The notes: generated by a model not told the origin, from the sequence alone. A stretch of DNA of 63,766 nt, filler included, from Hyphochytrium catenoides (GCA_900088475.1; 9 parts of 9 records of this genome joined end to end with filler, not necessarily neighbours in it), one strand, 5' to 3'. Shown: positions 9,193 to 20,688, counted from the whole stretch's first letter. A program made the numbers and translations.

Positions 9193-9199
9193 TCTCCCT

Positions 9200-9230
<31 letters not shown>

Positions 9231-9590
9231 CCTCTCTCTCTCTCTCTCGTCTTTCTCTCTCTCTCTTTCTTCTGTTCTCTCGGTCTTCTTTCCTCTCGGT
9301 CTCTTTTTTACCTTGCTGTTCTTCCTATTCTGTCGCCCTGCTTCTCAAGTTCTCTCTCCCTCGAGCTCTGCTCTCTCAAATGGTTGAACGGTGTGAGAGT
9401 CGTTCTAGGTTCTCTTCTTCTTCTTAAAGAGTACATGGGCTTCTTGCAATCTCCTTTTCTATTTTCTCGAGTCTCTCTCTCTGTGTCCAATGACTCTCTC
9501 TCTCCTCTCTCTCTCTCCGTCTTCAATCGTCTGCGTTGTCACTGTCTGACGATTTTCTTTCCCGTTTCTTCCACATCCGAAATCCTTTAG

Positions 9591-9937
9591 AAAAGACGCT
9601 TTTCACAGCTGCTCGTCTTGAGAAAATGGCCGACTGGATCGAGCGCTGTGTGGACGTGGACGCCTTGCTCAACGCGATCCCTTCTCTCGAGTTGAGTGCT
9701 GTCCCATCTTCCGCCCTGTGCTCTTCCTCAAGCCAAGAGAGGCCAGCCGTGCGCATCGGAATTGCAAGAGATGAAGCTTTTGTAAGATTGTGTTATACTT
9801 TATGAAGAACTGACCTCGGACCCGCGACTGACTCTTGCCCCTCTCTCTCTCTGCTGCTGTTTATTCTCCCTCTCGTTCTGTCCCTGCTTGCCTTTTGGCT
9901 CGCTCTCTCTTTCCGTCCCTGCTTGCCTTTTGGCTCG

Positions 9938-9988
<51 letters not shown>

Positions 9989-11354
9989 TCTCTTTCTCTC
10001 TCTCTCCCCCCATGCAGTGCTTCTACTATCACGATAATCTGATGCAGCTTGAAGCCCTAGGTCTCCATAAGTTGCGCTTCTGCTGTTTCCCTCTCTTGGC
10101 TCTAAATCTCTCCATCTCTCTTCGTTTGCGACTCTTCCTTGCTGGAGCTAACTTTAGCTTCTGATCCATCCTCAGGAGCCGAGCTCAGTTTCTTCTCACC
10201 CTTAGAGAGCACAGAGCTCCCCCCTGCTGACTGCTTGTACTTTGGCGGAGGGGTAAGAGTAGATGATGAATGTCTGAAGAGCCACTCTCTCTTTCTCTCT
10301 CTCTTTCTTTTCTCTCTCTCGCTCTGTCTGTCTCTGTCTGTCTCTCTCCGCTCGCTCTCTCCTTGTCTCTTTCTCTCTCCTCTCTCTCTCCTTTATTTGT
10401 TCTGTCTGTCTCCCGCCCTCTTCAGTTTCCCTAGCTCCCATCTTGAGACTCCCACTCACTCAGCTTCAACTCTGTTTCTCTTTGCCTGGCTCTCAGTATC
10501 CGGAACTCTTCGCTGAGAAGCTGGCATCTAACGCATCTTTAATAAGCCAGATTCTACGGTTTGCTCAGACTGGAGGTAGCGTAGGGCCGTCTTTGACAAT
10601 AGCTTCTTCATATCTGGAATCCTTCTTCTCTCTTCCACATCGTCTGTTGAGTGTCTCTCTCCTGTTTGACTCTCGTTATCATCTTTGTCCCTTCCTCTGA
10701 ATAGCTCTTACCGCCTTATCTTACGCCTTGTGTTTCGGCTTTGGCCCAGGCTGTATCTATGCTGAGTGTGGTGGCTTAATGTACCTGGCCACCGCTCTGA
10801 AGCTCTTAGACGAGGGATCTGAGCATGTGATGTGCGGTGTCCTGCCGTTTGCTGTCACTTTCTCGAGGCAGAACTTCAGACTGAAGCTCAGCTACGTAGA
10901 AGTTCACCCGAGGAGAGAGAGGGAGCAGGTGCCTTTCTTTGCTGAAGTGAAAGACGAGATGCGAGGGCATGTCTTTCACTACTCAGACATCGAAGACTTG
11001 GAGGGGTACATCGCTAGCGGAGCCCTCAGCACCACAATGGAGGTAAGGCAGACGGAACAGACTGAACAGAGGAGGGAGAGAGACAAAGAGGAAAGAGAAA
11101 CGGAACAGACGGAGAGGGAGAGGGAGAAAAAGGGAGGACGTGTGCAGCGTGAGCAAGTTGGATATGCTCACTTTGCTCTCTGAAAGGTCAAGACCAACAT
11201 TGTTGGCAGTGATGGCGCTGTGCCAGAGGGCTTCGTAGTCGGCAACACGCTTGCGAGCTATGTCCACCTGCACTTTGGCAGCAATGAGACCATTGCCCCT
11301 TCGTTTCTTGGCTTTGTGGCTGAGAGGAGGAGAGAGACCGACAAGACAAGCTGA
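9591..11354 (+). CDS. cobB: Cobyrinate/hydrogenobyrinate a,c-diamide synthase (CbiA/CobB family), linker + C-terminal glutamine amidotransferase domain; 6 exons, 5' part missing at contig edge
   Basis: Exons 9591-9781, 10018-10060, 10176-10252, 10497-10575, 10750-11042 and 11187-11354, all GT-AG and in phase. The spliced protein carries RIGIARDEAF|CFYYHDNL, FFSPL, LYFGGG|YPELFA, IYAECGGLMYL, RGHVFHYS and EGFVVGNTLASYVHLHF, the ordered motif set of CobB/CbiA. Confidence 0.92.
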
Positions 11355-13094
11355 GAAAGCTTCCACCCTGACTCTTCGTGGCTTCCGTTGGGCTCGAGAG
11401 ACCGAACAAGAGTAAATGAAAGACGGAATCTTCACAGGGTTTACGTTGTCATCAAGACTGAAAGAAGAGACTGGCTGGTTCTGGGACTGCGCCGATTGAA
11501 GAAGCAATGAGGACAGAGATTGGGGAGGATGTTGCCCTGCGCTAAGACTTCTATTGGCAGCATCGTAGATTTCAATAGCAGAGAAGACAGACCGTCACTG
11601 AGAGGGCAGTAAGACTGCGAAGGAGAGGACAGATGAAGATGAGGCGGCGAAGGACAGAGAAGGAGGGAAAGAAAGACGGGGCAGACCTCTTAACAGAGCG
11701 CTGTCCGTGCTAGCTTAGAACTCAATCTATATTTCTCTCTCTTTCTATGAAAGAAGAGAGTCAGAACCTCAGTCAGGCAGCTGACTTCCTGCTCTCTCTC
11801 TCTGCGCTTTGACAGAAAGGAAAGCGAGGAAAGGTCGCGGCAGTAAGGGAACAGAAGAGGAAAGAAGAGAGGAAGTGGCCAGAAGATAGCTGCTTTCATA
11901 TTATTCCTCTTCTATCTTCAGCGCTAGTTAGACTGTTGGATGCGTAGAGCAACAAATCCTATCAAGCTTGCTTAGCTTGTCCCCTGAGGACGTGCTCGCG
12001 ACAAAGAGAGATAAAAAGAGAGAAAGGAACGAGCGACAGATAGAGCAGTGAAGGCTTAGAAGGTCGCTTGTGACCAAACGCTTTCAACATAAAAAGGGAG
12101 GAGCTGCAGCTAAGACATCCTCTCCTCTTTTTCTTCTCCGTCCTCTGGCCCGCTAAGCGCTCGACGCTCTCTGCAATAGCATCATACCGTCTCTCTCTCT
12201 TTCTCTTTTTCTCTCTTCCTCTTTTTCTTTCTTCTCTCTTAGAGTAGGGTAAGGAGCAGGAGGAAGAGTTTGATGGACCTCAGCTCAGTTAACAGCAGCC
12301 GCTGCCATTGTGATGTCGGCACGCTCCCTCGTTCAAGTGCGTGGCCAAGAGGAGTGCAAGACTCAGCCATTTGATGAGCAAGAAGAGGGAAGACTGCGCT
12401 TCCCACGAGCCGGCTGAGTAGTTGCTAGGAGCAGTGGGACGGACAACGGGTCAGTCGTGCTGCTGACAAGAGTAACGGATTGATGAGTCAAGTCTGTCTC
12501 TTCTATCTTTTTATTAGGCTTACGAGTAGGCTCTTCTTCCTTTGTCTGAGCTGTCGAGACGGCGTAGCTAGCAGCAGGAGCAGATGGAAAGAGAGGAACA
12601 ATGATCTTCCTCCTGCTGCTGCCTGGTCTTACCGTCCAACAAGCGCAATGGCAGTCAGCAGCCCGCCGCCTCTGCGTCTATCTATCATATCAGTCAATCA
12701 ATCATGAGCATCATCAGCGCCTCGGCAGCCAGGCAGGTAGAGGAGCTGCATCCTCTTTTATGGCTATTCCTATAGATTAAAACGCAAGGAAGATTGTAGT
12801 TCCTGCCGCGCTAGATGCTTGCGGCGGGCGGCATGGGCGCTGATGCTGAGCGGCCCCGCCGCCAGGCAGCAGCAGGCTTACTAGGAAGAATCACTGCAGA
12901 CTTTAGCAGGCAAAGGAGCTTGGTTCTGCTAAGAAATACTGCGCCCTTCTTTATCGCTGTTCGCTGCCTTTGCTTCCGAGAGCTGGTGCAGGAGGAGGAG
13001 AGAGAGAGGCGGAAGGTAGAACAAGTGAGAGCGAGAGAAGAGACAAGAGGAGACGGCAGAGAGAGAGAGAGAGAAGAGACCGAGCGAGAGCGAA

Positions 13095-13127
<33 letters not shown>

Positions 13128-13529
13128 GAGCGAGAGAGAGAGCGNNNNNNNNNNNNNNNNGAGAGAGAGAGAGAGAGAGAGAGAAGAGAGAGAGAGTGAG
13201 AAAGCCTACTTGTACAAGCAGCTGAAGATCTTTCCTGCTATCTCTTCCCCCATTTTCATCTTCTTCTCAAAGCATCATATCTTCGGAAGGAATGGCGAAA
13301 TGTAAAGCCAGGATAGGCTAGATTCGTTCAATCACCGGCATCTGCAATACATCCAGCGACAAAAAGGCGGGTAGATATAGAAATAGGTAGCTATAAACGT
13401 TATTCTCGAGTACAGTAGTAATTTCCTGGTCCGTTACAAGCTGAGTATTCCGAGAAAAAATGAGGGTCCTCGTGAGGCTTCAGGAAGAAGCCGCTTTTGC
13501 ACCGCCAAGAAACCGGTGCATAGGATCCA

Positions 13530-13578
<49 letters not shown>

Positions 13579-14508
13579 CTCTCGCTTCTCTCTTACATCA
13601 TATCTCTCATTGTCCTGCGAAGAAGAGACTGGCAGGTTCACCCTTGTTGTTTTTCTTCCCCGTCAGCTTGCCCTCGTTCTGACATCACCGAAGAGGATCT
13701 TCTTTTTCGAAAGATCCTTCTCCTTCCAGCCTCTCTCAAGATCCCCTCCCTCCTCTGGCGTTACTCTGGAAAGACAGAAGAGAGGGTGAGAGGAAGAGAG
13801 AGAGAGAGTTTGACAGAGGTGCTTTTGCTTACTCTTGCTAAGATAGGAAGAAGATGTCACCAGGTCCAAAGAGAACAGGAAATCCATCCTCGCAGCTGGC
13901 CGACGAGGAACCCCTAGTCCCATCACTTCTCTCTCATCGTCTCTCCCTTCCCTCTTTTGGCCTTGAGGCCGCAGTCAGCGGGACCTTCAGAAGCTAGAGA
14001 AATCAACCCTTCTCTGATGACTCAGTCAAAGCGTAGGACAGTCTGCGTCCGCGATAGAGAGAGAGAGAGAGAGAGAGAGAGGAATAGAAAGGAATAAACA
14101 GAGGAAGTATCGGACAACGCAGAAGGGAGAACGCTTGGTTTCTCCTTTTCTTTTTCTGTCTTCTTTTTCCTTACTCCTTCATGCCACTGTTCGCTCGCTC
14201 GCTCTCTCTTCTTTTCTCTCTCTCTCTCTCTCTCTCTCTTCCGCTCTCCTTTGGCTGGAGAGAAGCTAAGTGAAAAGAGGTCAATTCTGTCTCCCAGGAG
14301 ACTCTTTGCCAAAGGAGAGAGAGATCCTTCCTCCTTCTGTGCATGATGTAAAGGACTATTGACTGCTGCACTCTCTTCTGAGTGATCTTTAGCATTACGT
14401 CACTCATGCGGGAGCAGCAGCACTGGAAGTGATCTTCGTCTCTCTTCCTCCTCCACCTGCTGTTGACTGAGCAGAAGTGTTCGACATTGATAAGCCCCAT
14501 CATCCTAT

Positions 14509-14543
<35 letters not shown>

Positions 14544-14759
14544 AAGCGAGAGAGGAGTACATAGGAGGACAGGAGGGAGAGGAGAGAAAAGACGCTTGGC
14601 TCTTCTTTCCTAAAAGAAAGTGGTTGATCGCTCTCTTTACAAAGCAAAGCGGCAAGGAGGATGTGAAGAAATAGGGAGAGAAGAGCAGCAGTAAGACTAT
14701 CTCCCTCTCTCTCTCCTCGTTCCTTCTGCGTCTATTTGGAGATCACCCAGCTACGTACA

Positions 14760-14796
<37 letters not shown>

Positions 14797-14889
14797 CTCT
14801 AGGAAAGCTTAGCTCTGCACCAGCCCCTTCTCTTTCGCCTCTCTCCACCTGGTCATTCATTATCCAATCTTCCACCTCGAGCGAGCACT

Positions 14890-15606
14890 ATGCTAAGCAG
14901 ACTAGCCGTCAGAGCCCTACGTACCTCCACCACCGCCTCCAGCCTTCCAGGGTGCAGACTCAGTGCGTACCGTCCTCTCTCTATTAGAAGCACTATCAAC
15001 GAGACAATGGCATCCGCAATGGCCGCCGATAACAGTGACATCGTCTCTCAGATCATCCAGGACCACCGGGAAGCAGAGACGTACTATCAGAAGCTCAAGG
15101 AGAGCGTCACTGCTGAAGATTCTAACAAATGGTTCAACCAGCTCGTCTGGGAGATCTCTCGCCACTCGGTGGCTGAAGAGCTCGTCCTCTATCCAATGAT
15201 GGAGAAGCTTGGAGAGACTGGAAAGCGCTATGCTGATGAGTCTCGGAAGGAGCATCACATGGTGAAGGAGCTCCTTTCTAACGCAAAGACCGCACAGGCT
15301 AACGGCACCCCAGATGACCTAGAGAAGGCCGTAGACGAGGTTGTCAAGACTCTCTTCCTGCACATGGAGAAGGAAGAGAAAGAGGAGCTGCCTTACTTCA
15401 CCAACAACACGGATCTGCAGGACCGTCAGAAGGCTGGAGCTATGTTCTCCCGCAGAAAGAAGATCGTCCCTACGCGTCCACATACCGCTGTCTCTGAGAA
15501 GCACGCGGCTCTTGAGGGCGCTCTGGGTCTGATGCTAGCTCCTCTGGACAAGATGAGAGACATGTTCTCCTCTTTCCCTGATGAGCAGGAGCTGAAGAAC
15601 GCTTAA
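14890..15606 (+). CDS. Hemerythrin-like (HHE cation-binding) protein with mitochondrial-type presequence, intronless
   Basis: 238-aa ORF with metal-ligand motifs DHREAE, RHSVAEE, EHHMVK, HMEKEE and a C-terminal PTRPH motif. The N-terminus is R/S/L/A-rich and lacks acidic residues. Confidence 0.88.
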   Translation: MLSRLAVRALRTSTTASSLPGCRLSAYRPLSIRSTINETMASAMAADNSDIVSQIIQDHREAETYYQKLKESVTAEDSNKWFNQLVWEISRHSVAEELVLYPMMEKLGETGKRYADESRKEHHMVKELLSNAKTAQANGTPDDLEKAVDEVVKTLFLHMEKEEKEELPYFTNNTDLQDRQKAGAMFSRRKKIVPTRPHTAVSEKHAALEGALGLMLAPLDKMRDMFSSFPDEQELKNA

Positions 15607-17302
15607 GATTCACCAGATAAAGAAGAAAAAAAAACAATGCGAGAAAGAGAAAAGAAAGAGACAATTTTGAAGGAGAGAGAGGGAAGAAGAAGAAGAGGGG
15701 GAAGAGGGAGATGGTACCGAACCCTTTCTCTCTCTTCTCTCTCACTCTCTCTCTCTGCTTTTGTTCCTAGTACCTAGTTCTGTCTCCCCTACTATCAAGG
15801 GGAAGAGTTATACATCGATAACGGGCTTTCTTGCCCGCCATTAATATGAAGAAGAACATTGTAGACCAAGTGATATGTCAAGTCTTTGTCTCATCTCGCT
15901 CTATCTACAGCTCTTCCACGAGCCTCTCTCTCTCTTTCTCCTCCTGGACTGGAGGACATCGAATCGACTAAACCCCGGAGGAGCTGCGGCATGAACGTCT
16001 CGGCTCCGGAGCTTCTGTTTCTGAGGTGAGAAAGTAGGCAAGAGGATAAGAAGAGAGCCACAGCGTACAAGGAGATGGCGACTCAACTTCTTTCCTTGCT
16101 GGAGATGGAAGACCTCAAGGGCTTTGCATTGCAAGGAGGGAGGTAGGCATGACGATAGAGTGGGAGAGAGAGAAGTGAGAAAGGATGTGGGGAGAGATGT
16201 CTCTACGTCAGGTCGATAGTATCTTCTCTTCCTTTTCCTCTCTGACCACTTTGGCTAACAGATAGAGACAGACATCTTTATTTATCTATTGATCTGTGTA
16301 TGTTAGTCCTGATGTAGCCTGGACAAGCAAGCACATGATGTGAGAGAGAGAGGGCCGTCCCCCACCTTCCCGGGCCTAGGCTCTCTCCTTGAGTCGCAGG
16401 AGGTGGAAGAAGTTGCTTCCCTGAGAGGAACAGCAGAGGCAAGCCGCTGAGTAATCTATGGCAATTCAAGAAAATAGAGCGGAAGGAGGGCCGTCTCCTC
16501 TCTCACTTCTTCTCTGTTCTTCGATCCTTCTTCCTCTTCTTCCTCTCCTGTCTTTCTTAAGACTTATCCTGTCTCTCTTTGCGCTCTTTACCACCGCCTA
16601 CCTTGTTCTCTCAGGGTCAGCCAAAGTGTCTTGATCTCTTCAACAATGAGGAAGACCGCGGGAAGGATGAACTTCCAAACACCTCCCTGGTGGTGTCTGT
16701 GCGGATCCGATGCGCCGAGACAGGGATCAGACCAGGATGGAGGTATGAGTTGAACGCAACCGCAGCGAGAGGAGAGTAAGAGAGAGAGTGAGAGTGAGAG
16801 AGAAGACAGAAGATGTAGGGCAACTAAGGCAAACAGCAGATCAGAAAGTGTGAGACTCCACGGAGAGGAAGAGAGGGAGAAAGGCTTCGCTAGGAAGAGG
16901 TACCCTTTGGCACCTCCTATTTGACCTCTTAGACATATTCTCCAGCTGCATCTCTCCCATGAACCCGCTGCTCGCTCACAAGTATCCTTTGAGGTGTCTC
17001 CCAGAGTCATCGGGCGTCCTCTAGGAGAACGGGAGGAGAGAACCTCCAGGGGCACTGGGCACCCGTCCTGGAAGAGGGACCGATGATCCAGCCAAAGAGC
17101 CCGACGCAATGGACAATGGGAGACACCTCTAGGGAGACTGTCGAGCGGCAGACGTGGGAGGAGGTAGAGCTGGAGACCATGTTCAAGAAGCCAGAGAGGA
17201 GGTTGCCAAGTGTCTCTGTCCCTTCCAGAATCCCGGAAGAGAGTAGGAGGTAAAGAAAAGAGAGAGAGAGCGGAAAGGACTAGTTTCTTTCCTGTGTCTT
17301 AC

Positions 17303-19479
17303 CTTCTTGGATATCATCTCGAGCGGTGTCACGCTCCTCCCAGCACTCTTCTTCATCGTACTCCTCCTCCTCCTCCGGCTCCTCCTCCTCATAGTCATCC
17401 CCGTCCTCGAATTCGCCTCGTGAGTCCTCTTCACGGCTGGCGCCCGTCTTCCAGGACCAGCCTGGGATGCAGCCGTCAGCGGCGCTCCCTAGAGCGCAGA
17501 TAAACAGGTGAGAACTGTAGCGTCTCAGGAGCCCATGAGGCAGAAGGTAAGCAGAGAAGCAAGGAAGAGAACGGAGAGGGGAGACAGAGAATCAATGACA
17601 GCAACGCAAACACGTACCATTGTGGAGCCCATCTCGAGTGTCACTCTCCTCCCAGCACTCTTCTTCACCATACACCTCCTCCTCCTCCTCACAGTCATCC
17701 TCCTCCTCCTCTAAGTGCGACTCGCCTCTTGAGTCCTCTTCACGGCTGGCGCCCGTCTTCCAGGACCAGATTGGGGTGCCGCTGTCAGCGTCGCTCCCTA
17801 GAGCACACATCAAGAAGGAGAGAAAAGAAGGAGTCCTGAGGAGCACTGCGCCAGGAGGTAAGCAGAGCAAGGGAGAGACGAGAAGGGAGACAGGGTTATG
17901 ACCGCGAGGCAAACAGGAAAGGAAAGGGAGAGAGAAGTAAAGAGAGAGAGACTAGACAATGCCTTGGCGCGCCAGCGCTTACCCTTGAATACTCCTTCGA
18001 ACCTCTCCTCCTGCTGCTCATCCTCGAGCTCTTCTTCAGAGCCCTGCTCGCTTTGCGTGCCTGAAAACGAGCATTCTAGATCTTCCTCGTCCACCGCACT
18101 GCTGTCTGCTCCATGAGAGTGAGAGAGAACAAGGAGTCAAAGTAAGAGAGAGGTACCAAGCGTGAGAAATTCCCAATTGTCAACTCAGAACGGAGAGAGA
18201 AAGAGAGAGAGGGAATGCTGTCCCATTGAAGGCCTCAGCGCCGTCATGTCAAGAGTCTCTCTCTCATTGCGACTCCCGTTCCACCCTTTCTTAGAGACAG
18301 GGCGTATTCCCCAGAAATTGGAGAAAGAGCTGCGGCGTCACTGACTGGGGGCGACAAAGAAGAGAAGGAGATGGAGATGGAGAGAAGGAAAAGAGACAAG
18401 AATGTTGCAAAAAGCCGGGGCTGAATTACTCTGGACTAGTTACCTTCGAAGATGTTTTTGACCCCGAAGAAACCGTGCTGCCGCTCTCCTTCCAGGTGTT
18501 CGTCGTCGGGTTGTCGCCTTGCTGAGCCCCAGGACCACTTCTCAGGCTGCTTCCCCAGATCCTCCGCTTCGCCTACGTAGACAGAGAAAGAAAGGAACAA
18601 TGAGCCAGATGGGGTTTCCCTCATCGCGAGCAGGACAAGGCCCAAAGTAGAGAGAAAACAGAAGAAAGAGCTTATGTGGGAAAAGATTGAAGCACAGGAG
18701 AAGTGAGAGAGAGGCGGCACACAGTCTGATATCCTCTCCCTCAACTTTTGGTCTATTCTCCCTTACCGGTGAAGGGTTCTTCGGGGTCATCATCGTTTAC
18801 ACCCCACGCTCGACGGAGATCTTCCTCGAAGCTCGTAAAGAAACCTCCACCGCCAGCGGGAGGAACCTTCCCGTGCAGCTCCCAGAGTTGGTGCTGCAGC
18901 TCTGCCTTATCCTTCTTTAGCACCTCAACCCGCTGCTCTTCGACTAAGGTGGGGAGGGAGGAGAGACCATGGTGGGTAAGATGTCTCTACTCCTACTACT
19001 CTCCTCTCTCTCTTCTCGCTCCTCTCTCTCTCTCTCCTCTCTTCCCTCTCTCTCTCCTTCCTGAACTCTAACCAACTCCTGAATCTGTCATACTTGCAAG
19101 CTTGAGCCGGACCATCTCCAGCTCTGCGAGCGACTCGGCCAGTGCCTTATCTAAGGCGGCGGACTGGTGATAATTCCACTCCGCCATTTTCTGAGTATCG
19201 CGCAGGGTTGCGCCCATCTCCCTCAGGTGCTCCTCCATCGCCGCCAGCTCCTCGTCCCGGTGGTCCAAACATTTGCACAGTTCTGGCACAGAAATGAGGT
19301 AGACCAAAGAGCAGGTTATCCCGGGTGTATGGTTGGATGGGCGGAAGTGATGGTGGAAGGGAGATAAGACGAGTAAAGCGCCAAGGGAGGAGATGACCAC
19401 CAGAGTAGAAAACGACGGACGGGACCAGGCAAGGCAAAAAGAGAAGAAAGTCATCAATAGGGATCTGCAATGTGCGTGC

Positions 19480-19516
<37 letters not shown>

Positions 19517-19961
19517 CTTTCTTCCTTTCGGCTCTCTCTCTGCCTTGTCTGTCAATTCACTCTCATTTGCGTACTCTTAAGATACTTGGCGAGCCTCTTT
19601 TGATCCTGTCTGGCGTCCCGGAGTTCGGACTTCAAGGCTGCCCAGGATGAAGGTTCCTTGGGGTCTCGTAGCACAAGCTGGTACTGAGTCCAGTCAGGCT
19701 CTGGTTTGCCGGTCCTGAGAGTCTCTTTCAGCTCTCCATTCTCCGCTTCCAGAAAACTGAGTTCGCCCTCCAGAGCGCGGATTTTCTCGTCTTTCCCTAT
19801 GAGAAGAGGTTCAGTGTTAGCGCGAAGTAAGAAAGATGGGGTGCTTCTGCCGCCAGGACTTAGTCAAGAAGTGGGAGTGTGGGGCGAAAGGATGGAAGGT
19901 CATAGAAGTGTATGTAAGGCATAGATCAAAGATGGGAGAGGGAGGGGTGGGGAGTGGAGGA

Positions 19962-20002
<41 letters not shown>

Positions 20003-20159
20003 CCTTCCATGGCTTCCTCCAGTCTCATCTTTTCCATCTGACGTTGTGTCAGCTGCTTTCCTAGGGCAGTAACTCGAAACTTCTGCTCTTTAAGGTCCCG
20101 TTCTTTGGTTTCGAAGGCGCGGGACATATCAGCCCACTGTCTCACTCCAGAGTGGAACT
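17303..20159 (-). CDS. Multi-exon coiled-coil / acidic protein of unknown function (partial)
   Basis: A series of GT-AG flanked open segments with heptad E/K/L-rich translation (e.g. 20159-20004 FHSGVRQWADMSRAFETKERDLKEQKFRVTALGKQLTQRQMEKMRLEE; DEELAAMEEHLREMGATLRD), followed by acidic WSW-containing exons. The 3' end is unresolved and may extend to ~15.9 kb. Confidence 0.55.
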
Positions 20160-20688
20160 CTATAAGAAAGGGTAAGAAGCGACGTGAGGGCTCCAGCAAT
20201 GGAATCGCCGCCAGCAGGTTGATGGGAGGAGGAGCTGATGATGAGGATAGATAGCCCTTATCTGAAGTAGAANNNNNNNNNNNNNNNNNNNNNNNNNNNN
20301 NNNNNNNNNNNNNNNNTTAATTAATTAANNNNNNNNNNNNNNNNNNNNNNNNNNNNNNNNNNNNNNNNNNNNAGAGAGAGAGAGAGAGAAAGAAACGGAA
20401 ACGAGAGAGAATATGACACAAGAGAGATGTGAGACTGAAGGCACAGGAAGAGAAAGAGAGAGTGAGTGAGCAAGGGGAACAGCGAAAGCGAGCATGGCAG
20501 AGAGAGAGAGAGACAAAGAGAGAGAAAGACAGAATAAGACGGAGAGAGGGGGGAAGAGAAAGCGAGAGACAAGGATCTACTAGCCGACCCTGGTCTTCAA
20601 AGAGTCAAAAAGGAGACTGACAGCAGAGGAAAAGAGAGGGATGAAGAGAAAGAGACGCCTTCTCCAAGCCGCCTATTACTCTGCTCAC

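What the first reader, a model, noticed from the sequence alone, without database searches (positions are those of the whole stretch)
9591..11354. Spliced eukaryotic gene for a corrinoid a,c-diamide synthase (CobB/CbiA)
Seen: six phase-compatible exons rebuild an intact CobB/CbiA glutaminase domain with the catalytic Cys (AECGG) and the YVHLH His. The five GT-AG introns mostly carry the host's own CT/AG microsatellite, which argues against bacterial contamination. Two introns split conserved motifs (DEAF|CFYY, GGG|YPE), so ORF-based annotation misses the gene. The protein ends right after the domain, with no C-terminal fusion. Established: de novo cobalamin synthesis is prokaryotic; CbiA/CobB amidate corrin side chains a and c; the paralogue CfbB does the same chemistry in coenzyme F430 synthesis; known algal B12 remodelling concerns the lower ligand (CobT/CobS/CobC), not ring amidation. 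Inference: a domesticated enzyme for salvage or repair of incomplete/deamidated corrinoids, or amidation of another tetrapyrrole. Homologues may already be annotated in other algae; I could not check.
Basis: partly seen in the sequence, partly recalled or inferred. Interest (0 to 1): 0.85.

Follow-up and report, generated by a model that had tools for sequence, protein, structure and literature searches.

The report
Intron-split CobB/CbiA amidotransferase gene in a eukaryote
A eukaryotic contig carries six exons that splice into an intact glutamine-hydrolysing half of a bacterial-type vitamin-B12 ring amidating enzyme (CobB/CbiA); eukaryotes are not thought to have this step, but the other half of the gene, its expression and the host species could not be seen here.

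Summary
Six + strand exons (9591-11354), joined at five GT-AG introns, give a stop-free 282-residue protein. It aligns as one domain (264 bits) to positions 217-476 of a 479-position profile I built from 114 prokaryotic CobB proteins. These six pieces are the only CobB-like fragments in the 11-kb piece, and they lie in profile order. The protein keeps all 36 columns that are at least 90% conserved, including the Cys nucleophile (AECGG) and the YVHLH histidines. The four pyrimidine-rich introns, one purine-rich intron and CT/AG microsatellites across the contig rule out bacterial contamination.

The ATP-binding synthetase half, which binds the substrate, lies beyond the left edge of the piece. 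No RNA evidence was obtainable and the host is unidentified. No protein among 1.84 billion cluster representatives exceeds 51% identity on exon 5. A careful tree places the gene inside bacterial CobB/CbiA diversity, with no resolved donor.

I read it as a functional, horizontally acquired nuclear a,c-diamide synthase gene. The substrate (corrinoid or another tetrapyrrole) is inferred, not shown. Interest is moderate: a new member of a known enzyme family in an unexpected host.

The parts
9193..9590 (+). 3' part of the intron upstream of E1. It is CT-rich with (TC)n runs, has a polypyrimidine tract and ends in acceptor AG at 9589-90. The gene's 5' exons lie beyond the edge of the piece.
   Evidence: Sequence; (TC)n runs; no CobB-like fragment in this stretch in the six-frame HMM scan.
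9591..9781 (+). Exon 1 of those seen. It encodes the linker helix and the start of the glutaminase domain and ends ...RIGIARDEAF. It contains an in-frame ATG at 9626.
   Evidence: NCBIfam CobB positions 202-255; home-made HMM positions 216-273.
9782..10017 (+). Intron 1, 236 nt, GTAAGA..GCAG, 80% pyrimidine, with a (TC)19 run.
10018..10060 (+). Exon 2 (CFYYHDNLMQLEAL, then a split Gly codon).
   Evidence: HMM positions 274-294; best junction.
10061..10175 (+). Intron 2, 115 nt, GTCTCC..TCAG, 71% pyrimidine.
10176..10252 (+). Exon 3 (AELSFFSPL...LYFGGG).
   Evidence: TIGR00379 positions 271-295; HMM positions 287-314.
10253..10496 (+). Intron 3, 244 nt, GTAAGA..TCAG, 77% pyrimidine, with a degenerate CT array.
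10497..10575 (+). Exon 4 (YPELFAEKLASN...AQTG).
   Evidence: TIGR00379 positions 296-321; HMM positions 315-343.
10576..10749 (+). Intron 4, 174 nt, GTAGCG..CCAG, 69% pyrimidine.
   Evidence: A 237-nt contig of run X1 crosses this intron/exon boundary unspliced.
10750..11042 (+). Exon 5, the core of the glutaminase domain. The nucleophile Cys codon TGT lies at 10767-10769 in the motif IYAECGGLMYL. The exon also holds RGHVFHYS.
   Evidence: Pfam GATase_3 32.2 bits; NF002204 CobB 54.5 bits; HMM positions 342-437; invariant E, C, G, G kept.
11043..11186 (+). Intron 5, 144 nt, GTAAGG..AAAG, purine-rich. An acceptor at 11191-92 (exon start 11193) fits equally well.
11187..11354 (+). Exon 6, the end of the domain. 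The conserved His codons of LASYVHLHFGS lie at 11265-67 and 11271-73. Stop TGA at 11352-54.
   Evidence: TIGR00379 positions 417-446; GATase_3 positions 168-195; HMM positions 436-476 of 479.

Best explanation
This is a real nuclear gene of bacterial ancestry that has acquired spliceosomal introns. It encodes a tetrapyrrole a,c-diamide synthase of the CobB/CbiA family. The piece holds only the 3' half: the linker and the complete CobBQ-type glutaminase domain. By analogy with characterised CbiA and CobB, the Cys of AECGG attacks glutamine with help from the conserved His. The ammonia released passes to an N-terminal, dethiobiotin-synthetase-like ATP-binding domain. That domain phosphorylates and then amidates the a and c acetate side chains of the ring. 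I take it to be encoded by exons upstream of 9193. The most likely substrate is a cobyrinic or hydrogenobyrinic acid-type corrinoid, obtained from bacteria or shared with a bacterial partner or organelle, because eukaryotes are not known to make the corrin ring. Shown here: the exon structure, family membership of the C-terminal half, retention of every highly conserved residue, and the eukaryotic context. Inferred: the N-terminal domain, expression, the substrate and the physiological role.
For: The six exons are collinear on CobB models. The spliced protein scores 264 bits as one domain over HMM positions 217-476, and nothing else in the piece hits. The chosen junctions are the best in-frame GT-AG options. 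The protein keeps 36 of 36 columns conserved at 90% or more and 57 of 65 conserved at 70% or more, against a bacterial median of 58; this argues for purifying selection. Exons are 47-56% pyrimidine, while introns are 69-80% or 24%, and 25 perfect CT/AG runs are spread over the 11-kb contig. The intronless eukaryote-type hemerythrin gene lies 3.5 kb downstream. The careful tree puts the gene inside the large bacterial CobB group that also holds enterobacterial CbiA. Most near relatives lie in cob operons: L082 with CobS, L059 with CobS, L107 with CbiK, CbiC and CbiD. E1 starts at a strong acceptor in mid-protein (HMM position 216), as expected for an internal exon. The one exonic difference in the 98%-identical X1 contig is synonymous (TAC to TAT at 10784).
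Against: There is no transcript evidence. The synthetase domain, which defines the substrate, was not seen. No other cobalamin gene of this genome could be examined, and eukaryotes are not known to hold cobyrinic acid. The sister group in the tree includes a bacterial gene next to nitrogenase-like CfbC/CfbD-like genes, which hints at non-corrin chemistry in that clade. The host organism is unknown.
Confidence: 0.5

Rival explanations
1. The same enzyme type works on a non-corrin tetrapyrrole that the eukaryote makes itself, such as sirohydrochlorin or sirohaem, or a metal-sirohydrochlorin as with CfbB. It would give an a,c-diamide that feeds an unknown pathway.
For: Exon pieces score almost as well on the CfbB model as on the CobB models (for E5, 49.5 against 54.5 bits). 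In the careful tree the window forms a starred clade with P0031 and P0094. P0094 lies directly upstream of a NifH-like (CfbC model, 353 bits)/NifD-like fusion and a NifK/BchB-like gene. Sirohaem precursors exist in many eukaryotes, whereas corrin precursors do not (established knowledge).
Against: No sequence in the set reaches the CfbB cut-off of 560 bits. Most neighbouring relatives sit in cob operons. No nitrogenase-like partner is visible in this piece. The substrate-binding half is missing, so nothing here favours a non-corrin substrate directly.
Confidence: 0.17
2. The gene encodes a stand-alone glutaminase of about 271 residues that starts at ATG 9626. It would serve another amidoligase, as GatD serves MurT, and would have no CobB synthetase domain.
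For: There is an in-frame ATG at 9626 in an AAAATGG context. No synthetase exon lies in the 398 nt upstream. Stand-alone GATase_3 proteins exist; GatD chains (6gs2, and 5n9m, deposited as cobyric acid synthase) were the only solved relatives found.
Against: The HMM alignment begins six residues upstream of that Met, at CobB position 217. A polypyrimidine tract and AG acceptor sit at 9589-90, with the frame open across them. The best matches over all 270 residues are two-domain CobB proteins, not GatD or CobQ.
Confidence: 0.1
3. It is a silent or decaying relic of an old gene transfer and no longer functions.
For: No RNA evidence. There is no known use for the enzyme in eukaryotes. The terminal branch in the tree is long (0.82).
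Against: Six exons have open frames and canonical splice sites. All 36 highly conserved columns are kept, and conservation equals that of typical bacterial enzymes.
Confidence: 0.1
4. It is bacterial contamination or a chimeric assembly.
For: All relatives found are prokaryotic.
Against: Five GT-AG introns interrupt conserved motifs. They have the same CT/AG-rich make-up as the rest of the contig. No bacterial relative exceeds 51% identity. A second data set (X1) holds the intron 4/exon 5 boundary at 98% identity.
Confidence: 0.02

Closest known systems
Bacterial cobyrinic/hydrogenobyrinic acid a,c-diamide synthase (Salmonella CbiA, Pseudomonas denitrificans CobB; NCBIfam NF002204, TIGR00379)
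   Same: The C-terminal half is collinear with these enzymes. It shares the GATase_3 domain, the YAECGG nucleophile motif, RGHxFHYS, the SYxHxH histidines and the same protein end. Identity is 38-45% over about 270 residues.
   Different: The gene is split by at least five (probably six or more) spliceosomal introns in a eukaryotic contig. It has no cob-operon neighbours. It lies on a deep, orphan branch with no close relative in 1.84 billion cluster representatives. The synthetase half was not seen.
CfbB, Ni-sirohydrochlorin a,c-diamide synthase of coenzyme F430 synthesis (NF033195)
   Same: It is a paralogue with the same fold and chemistry. The exon pieces score nearly as well on this model.
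   Different: CfbB is confined to methanogens and related archaea and works with CfbCDE. Nothing of that kind is in this piece, and no certified CfbB was available for the tree, so the two were not distinguished.
CobQ/CbiP cobyric acid synthase and the GatD glutaminase
   Same: They carry the same CobBQ-type (GATase_3) glutaminase domain.
   Different: No exon piece hits a CobQ model at E up to 1. The solved GatD chains match a bacterial CobB only weakly (23 bits).
Cobalamin-related nuclear genes already reported in algae: CobT/CobS/CobC remodelling genes, BluB and CobT in Braarudosphaera bigelowii, CobW/CbiX/CobS in Chrysochromulina tobin, and a CobB-like transcript in C. brevifilum
   Same: These too are single bacterial-type cob genes in eukaryotes that lack the full pathway (PMC12903740, PMC4580454, PMC4057078).
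   Different: Those genes concern the lower ligand, nucleotide loop, chelatase-like or chaperone steps. The only CobB-like report is an unverified transcriptome hit. Here the gene's intron structure shows a eukaryotic genomic location for a ring-amidation enzyme.

Membership tests
CobB/CbiA/CfbB a,c-diamide synthase family (TIGR00379 subfamily) | C-terminal CobBQ-type glutamine amidotransferase domain (Pfam GATase_3) | tested here: met
   E5 alone scores 32.2 bits against a cut-off of 27, and E6 matches the end of the model. The spliced protein scores 264 bits on a CobB HMM, positions 217-476.
CobB/CbiA/CfbB a,c-diamide synthase family (TIGR00379 subfamily) | Nucleophile Cys in the AECGG motif and the conserved C-terminal His residues | tested here: met
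   The Cys codon lies at 10767-69 and the His codons at 11265-67 and 11271-73. All 36 of 36 columns conserved at 90% or more are kept.
CobB/CbiA/CfbB a,c-diamide synthase family (TIGR00379 subfamily) | N-terminal dethiobiotin-synthetase-like ATP-binding synthetase domain (Pfam CbiA/AAA_26) on the same polypeptide | not testable with these tools
   The piece starts at 9193. No fragment matches HMM positions 1-215. E1 begins at an acceptor site in mid-protein.
CobB/CbiA/CfbB a,c-diamide synthase family (TIGR00379 subfamily) | Whole-protein score above the curated NCBIfam cut-off (254 to 261 bits) | tested here: inconclusive
   The pieces could only be scored separately. They sum to roughly 110-120 bits for half of the model. 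The spliced protein could not be submitted to the curated library.
CobB/CbiA/CfbB a,c-diamide synthase family (TIGR00379 subfamily) | Phylogenetic placement among a,c-diamide synthases rather than CobQ | tested here: met
   The careful tree places it inside the bacterial CobB group that holds enterobacterial CbiA. There were no CobQ hits for any exon.
CobB/CbiA/CfbB a,c-diamide synthase family (TIGR00379 subfamily) | ATP- and glutamine-dependent amidation of the a and c side chains | not tested
   This needs enzyme assays or complementation.
CfbB (Ni-sirohydrochlorin a,c-diamide synthase, NF033195) | Score above the exception-level cut-off (560 bits), or clustering with methanogen CfbB next to cfbCDE | tested here: inconclusive
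   Piece scores are close to those for CobB. No certified CfbB was in the tree; even the Methanotrichaceae row scores 507 bits, below 560. The search for archaeal relatives returned only CbiA-named proteins.
CobQ/CbiP cobyric acid synthase | Match to CobQ models (TIGR00313, NF001989) | tested here: not met
   No CobQ model appears among the hits of any exon piece at E up to 1.

The most novel reading that the evidence does not exclude
The host eukaryote encodes in its nucleus not just this enzyme but several late corrin-ring tailoring steps. These would serve either its own pathway or one that completes the cobamide pathway of a bacterial endosymbiont or organelle. That would be the first corrin-ring biosynthetic step carried out by eukaryote-encoded enzymes.
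Probability: 0.1. Interest if true: 0.9.

Novelty: new member of a known kind. Interest (0 to 1): 0.55.

Why it matters
Cobalamin ring synthesis is regarded as exclusively prokaryotic. Eukaryotic B12 genes described so far concern uptake, lower-ligand remodelling or cofactor loading. A conserved nuclear gene with introns for the a,c-amidation step would mean one of two things. Some eukaryote may handle incomplete corrinoids, through salvage or a pathway shared with a symbiont. Alternatively, this enzyme family may have been recruited for another tetrapyrrole. Either case gives a concrete gene to express and assay. It also shows that ORF-based screens for cob genes can miss intron-split eukaryotic copies.

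Tried and rejected
- RNA evidence. The run search found a single low-share run. Laying it gave only one unspliced 237-nt contig across intron 4/E5 and one repeat match, so it offers no test of splicing.
- Close relatives. An exhaustive phmmer of E5 against 1.84 billion cluster representatives gave nothing above 51% identity. A metagenome contig scan gave at most 48% (57% over a short 53-residue match). The ESM Atlas returned only bacterial clusters. Relatives of P0031 added nothing closer.
- The many roughly 150-residue hits whose match starts at residue 15 proved to be truncated bacterial genes called from an internal Met, not eukaryotic exons.
- P0030 and L059, which carry insertions, looked possibly eukaryotic but lie in compact bacterial operons.
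- Host identification failed. There is no tRNA or Rfam hit. The hemerythrin neighbour has no exact record and at best 54% identity, and the Atlas points only to generic eukaryotic (mostly fungal) hemerythrins.
- The search for a labelled CfbB reference through a Methanotrichaceae query returned only CbiA-named proteins.
- No solved CobB/CbiA structure exists by sequence search.
- No paper in the searched library reports a verified eukaryotic cobB.
- The spliced protein could not be submitted to the curated HMM libraries, the large protein searches or structure prediction, because it has no reference. I scored it only with tools inside run_python.

Full report
**1. What is in the sequence**

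The piece (9193-20272) has about 50% G+C and is strewn with CT/AG microsatellites. There are 25 perfect runs of six or more units across the 11 kb, and one assembly gap of N at 13145-13160.

On the + strand between 9591 and 11354 lie six open segments separated by five GT..AG intervals:
- E1 9591-9781
- E2 10018-10060
- E3 10176-10252
- E4 10497-10575
- E5 10750-11042
- E6 11187-11354

The intron phases are 0, 1, 0, 1, 0. The joined 849 nt, counted from the first whole codon at 9593, translate into 282 residues without a stop and end at TGA 11352-54.

Exons are 47-56% pyrimidine. Introns 1-4 are 69-80% pyrimidine and intron 5 is 24%, that is, purine-rich. Perfect (CT)n runs occur only in intron 1 and in the partial intron upstream of E1. 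Intron 3 has a degenerate CT array.

**2. Is it more than chance?**

- Submitted separately, the exon pieces hit NCBIfam CobB models in order: TIGR00379 positions 203-255, 271-295, 296-321, 324-397 and 417-446. E5 alone passes the Pfam GATase_3 cut-off.
- I built an HMM from 114 full-length prokaryotic CobB proteins and scanned all 470 stop-free six-frame fragments of the piece. The six exon fragments were the only hits (E from 6e-26 to 0.014), all on the + strand, with abutting HMM coordinates 216-273, 274-294, 287-314, 315-343, 342-437 and 436-476. The next fragment had E 2.8.
- The spliced protein scores 264 bits as one uninterrupted domain over HMM positions 217-476 of 479. E5 alone scores 85.7 bits on the same HMM.
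- I tried every in-frame, stop-free GT-AG alternative within about 45 nt of each junction. The chosen junctions 1-4 were the best by 8.5 to 39 bits. Junction 5 is a tie between acceptors 11187 and 11193.
- The junctions fall inside conserved motifs (DEAF|CFYY, GGG|YPE) with no gap in the alignment.

**3. Is the product intact?**

I compared the protein with 165 prokaryotic homologues. It keeps all 36 columns that are at least 90% conserved. It keeps 57 of the 65 columns that are at least 70% conserved, where the bacterial median is 58 and the 5th percentile is 51.

These columns include the nucleophile Cys of IYAECGGLMYL (codon 10767-69), RGHVFHYS and LASYVHLHFGS. A decaying pseudogene would not be expected to look like this.

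The only population-type datum is a 237-nt contig of run X1 that is 98% identical. Its single exonic difference is synonymous (TAC to TAT at 10784). That is too little to weigh.

**4. What is missing**

The alignment starts at CobB position 216-217, in the linker after the synthetase domain. E1 starts right after a polypyrimidine tract and AG acceptor, with a split codon. Nothing in the 398 nt upstream, nor anywhere else in the piece, matches positions 1-215.

The ATP-binding, substrate-binding half must therefore lie beyond the left edge of the piece, if it exists. An in-frame ATG at 9626 leaves open a stand-alone glutaminase of about 271 residues. I rate this low, because the CobB alignment continues upstream of that Met and all the best full-length matches are two-domain CobBs.

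No transcript evidence could be obtained. One run with 8% of the sampled words gave one unspliced contig across the intron 4/E5 boundary, which is most simply genomic DNA.

**5. Relatives and origin**

- An exhaustive phmmer of E5 against 1.84 billion cluster representatives found 189 hits. None has E at or below 1e-10 and none is above 51% identity.
- The spliced protein is 38-45% identical over about 270 residues to CobBs of many phyla, including Rokubacteria/Methylomirabilota, Desulfobaccales, Myxococcota and Nitrospirota. Scores plateau at 175-180 bits.
- A scan of JGI metagenome contigs gave at most 48% identity over the full match length (57% over a short 53-residue match).
- Every hit whose genomic context I inspected is prokaryotic, usually in a cob operon.
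- In a careful IQ-TREE analysis (75 rows, 259 columns, LG+C20 PMSF) the window protein lies inside the larger of two well-separated prokaryotic groups (98/98). That group also holds enterobacterial CbiA.
- Its only supported neighbours are P0031 (98/71), named by NCBI as cobyrinate a,c-diamide synthase of a Myxococcaceae MAG with 40% G+C, and P0094 (98/86). Overall identity to these two (38%) is lower than to the Rokubacteria rows, branches are long, and both bacterial rows have unusual amino-acid composition. I therefore treat the donor as unresolved.
- The single cyanobacterial row is not close, so a plastid origin gets no support. Cyanobacteria were barely sampled, because retrieval used the single peptide pattern ECGGLMYL.
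- The hemerythrin gene 3.5 kb downstream also has no relative above 54% identity. The host therefore belongs to a poorly sampled lineage, and the lack of eukaryotic orthologues says little about how widespread the gene is.

**6. Function**

Family membership of the C-terminal half is firm, so the glutaminase chemistry follows from established work on CbiA and CobB.

The substrate cannot be read from this piece. CobB, CbiA and CfbB differ in the missing half, and the exon pieces score nearly equally on the CobB and CfbB models.

I commit to a two-domain a,c-diamide synthase acting on a cobyrinic or hydrogenobyrinic acid-type corrinoid (confidence 0.5). The reasons are that the tree places it among enzymes of cob operons and that conservation is complete.

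The main rival is a non-corrin tetrapyrrole substrate (0.17). One of the two sister sequences, P0094, lies immediately upstream of a NifH-like/NifD-like fusion and a NifK/BchB-like gene. The NifH-like part scores 353 bits on the CfbC model against a cut-off of 402. This arrangement recalls cfbB-cfbC-cfbD, but in a bacterium with TonB-dependent receptor genes.

The remaining rivals are a stand-alone glutaminase (0.1), a silent relic (0.1) and contamination (0.02, effectively excluded by the introns).

**7. Comparison with what is known**

In the library I searched, no paper reports a verified eukaryotic cobB or cbiA.
- The nearest report is a "CobB-like" predicted protein in the Chrysochromulina brevifilum transcriptome (PMC4057078).
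- Single cob-related genes (CobW, CobS, CbiX) are noted in C. tobin (PMC4580454).
- Nuclear BluB and CobT transcripts are noted in Braarudosphaera bigelowii, the host of the UCYN-A nitroplast (PMC12903740).

The present gene fits that pattern of isolated bacterial-type cob genes in eukaryotes. It differs in concerning ring amidation, and its intron structure proves a eukaryotic genomic location.

The protein itself is an ordinary member of its family. The novelty lies in the host and the gene structure, so I class it as a new member of a known kind.

**8. Verdict**

Interest is moderate (0.55). A B12 specialist would find it surprising, and it is directly testable. However, only half of the gene is visible, there is no evidence of expression, and neither the host nor the rest of its cobalamin gene set could be examined.

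Noticed in passing
window 14890-15606 (+): An intronless 238-residue ORF with a hemerythrin HHE cation-binding domain (Pfam 54.7 bits) and a basic, Ser/Thr/Ala/Arg-rich N-terminus that looks like an organelle presequence. The best relatives are only 54% identical, and the Atlas look-alikes are mostly fungal.
   Followed up: partly
window 18756-20271 (-): Several stop-free minus-strand segments encode coiled-coil-like peptides (for example 19863-19555, 19556-19071 and 18986-18756). They are probably exons of one multi-exon gene that runs off the right edge of the piece. No Pfam hit for the one segment I tried.
   Followed up: partly
window 13145-13160: An assembly gap (run of N) inside a long AG/GA microsatellite region at about 13058-13196. 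The contig is a scaffold joined across a repeat.
   Followed up: no
L083 8001-12918: In a 149-kb bacterial metagenome contig (41% G+C), the CobB homologue P0094 is directly followed by a 745-residue fusion of a NifH-like ATPase (best NCBIfam model CfbC, 353 bits, below its cut-off) with a NifD/NifE-like domain, and then by a 445-residue NifK/BchB-like protein. This is a cfbBCD-like cluster outside the methanogens and suggests an uncharacterised amidated-tetrapyrrole pathway in bacteria.
   Followed up: partly
tree (loci L002-L081): Prokaryotic CobB C-terminal domains split into two strongly supported groups (98/98). One holds Desulfobacterales, some Gammaproteobacteria, Bacillota and the Methanotrichaceae row. 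The other holds Chloroflexota, Rokubacteria, Nitrospira, enterobacterial CbiA and the window gene. Phyla are mixed in both, which fits paralogy or frequent transfer.
   Followed up: no
window 10619-10850 (run X1): A 237-nt contig from an independent public run matches intron 4 plus the start of exon 5 with 4 differences. It confirms that this intron-exon boundary exists in another data set of the same or a very close organism. The listed difference in the exon (10784 C>T) is synonymous.
   Followed up: yes
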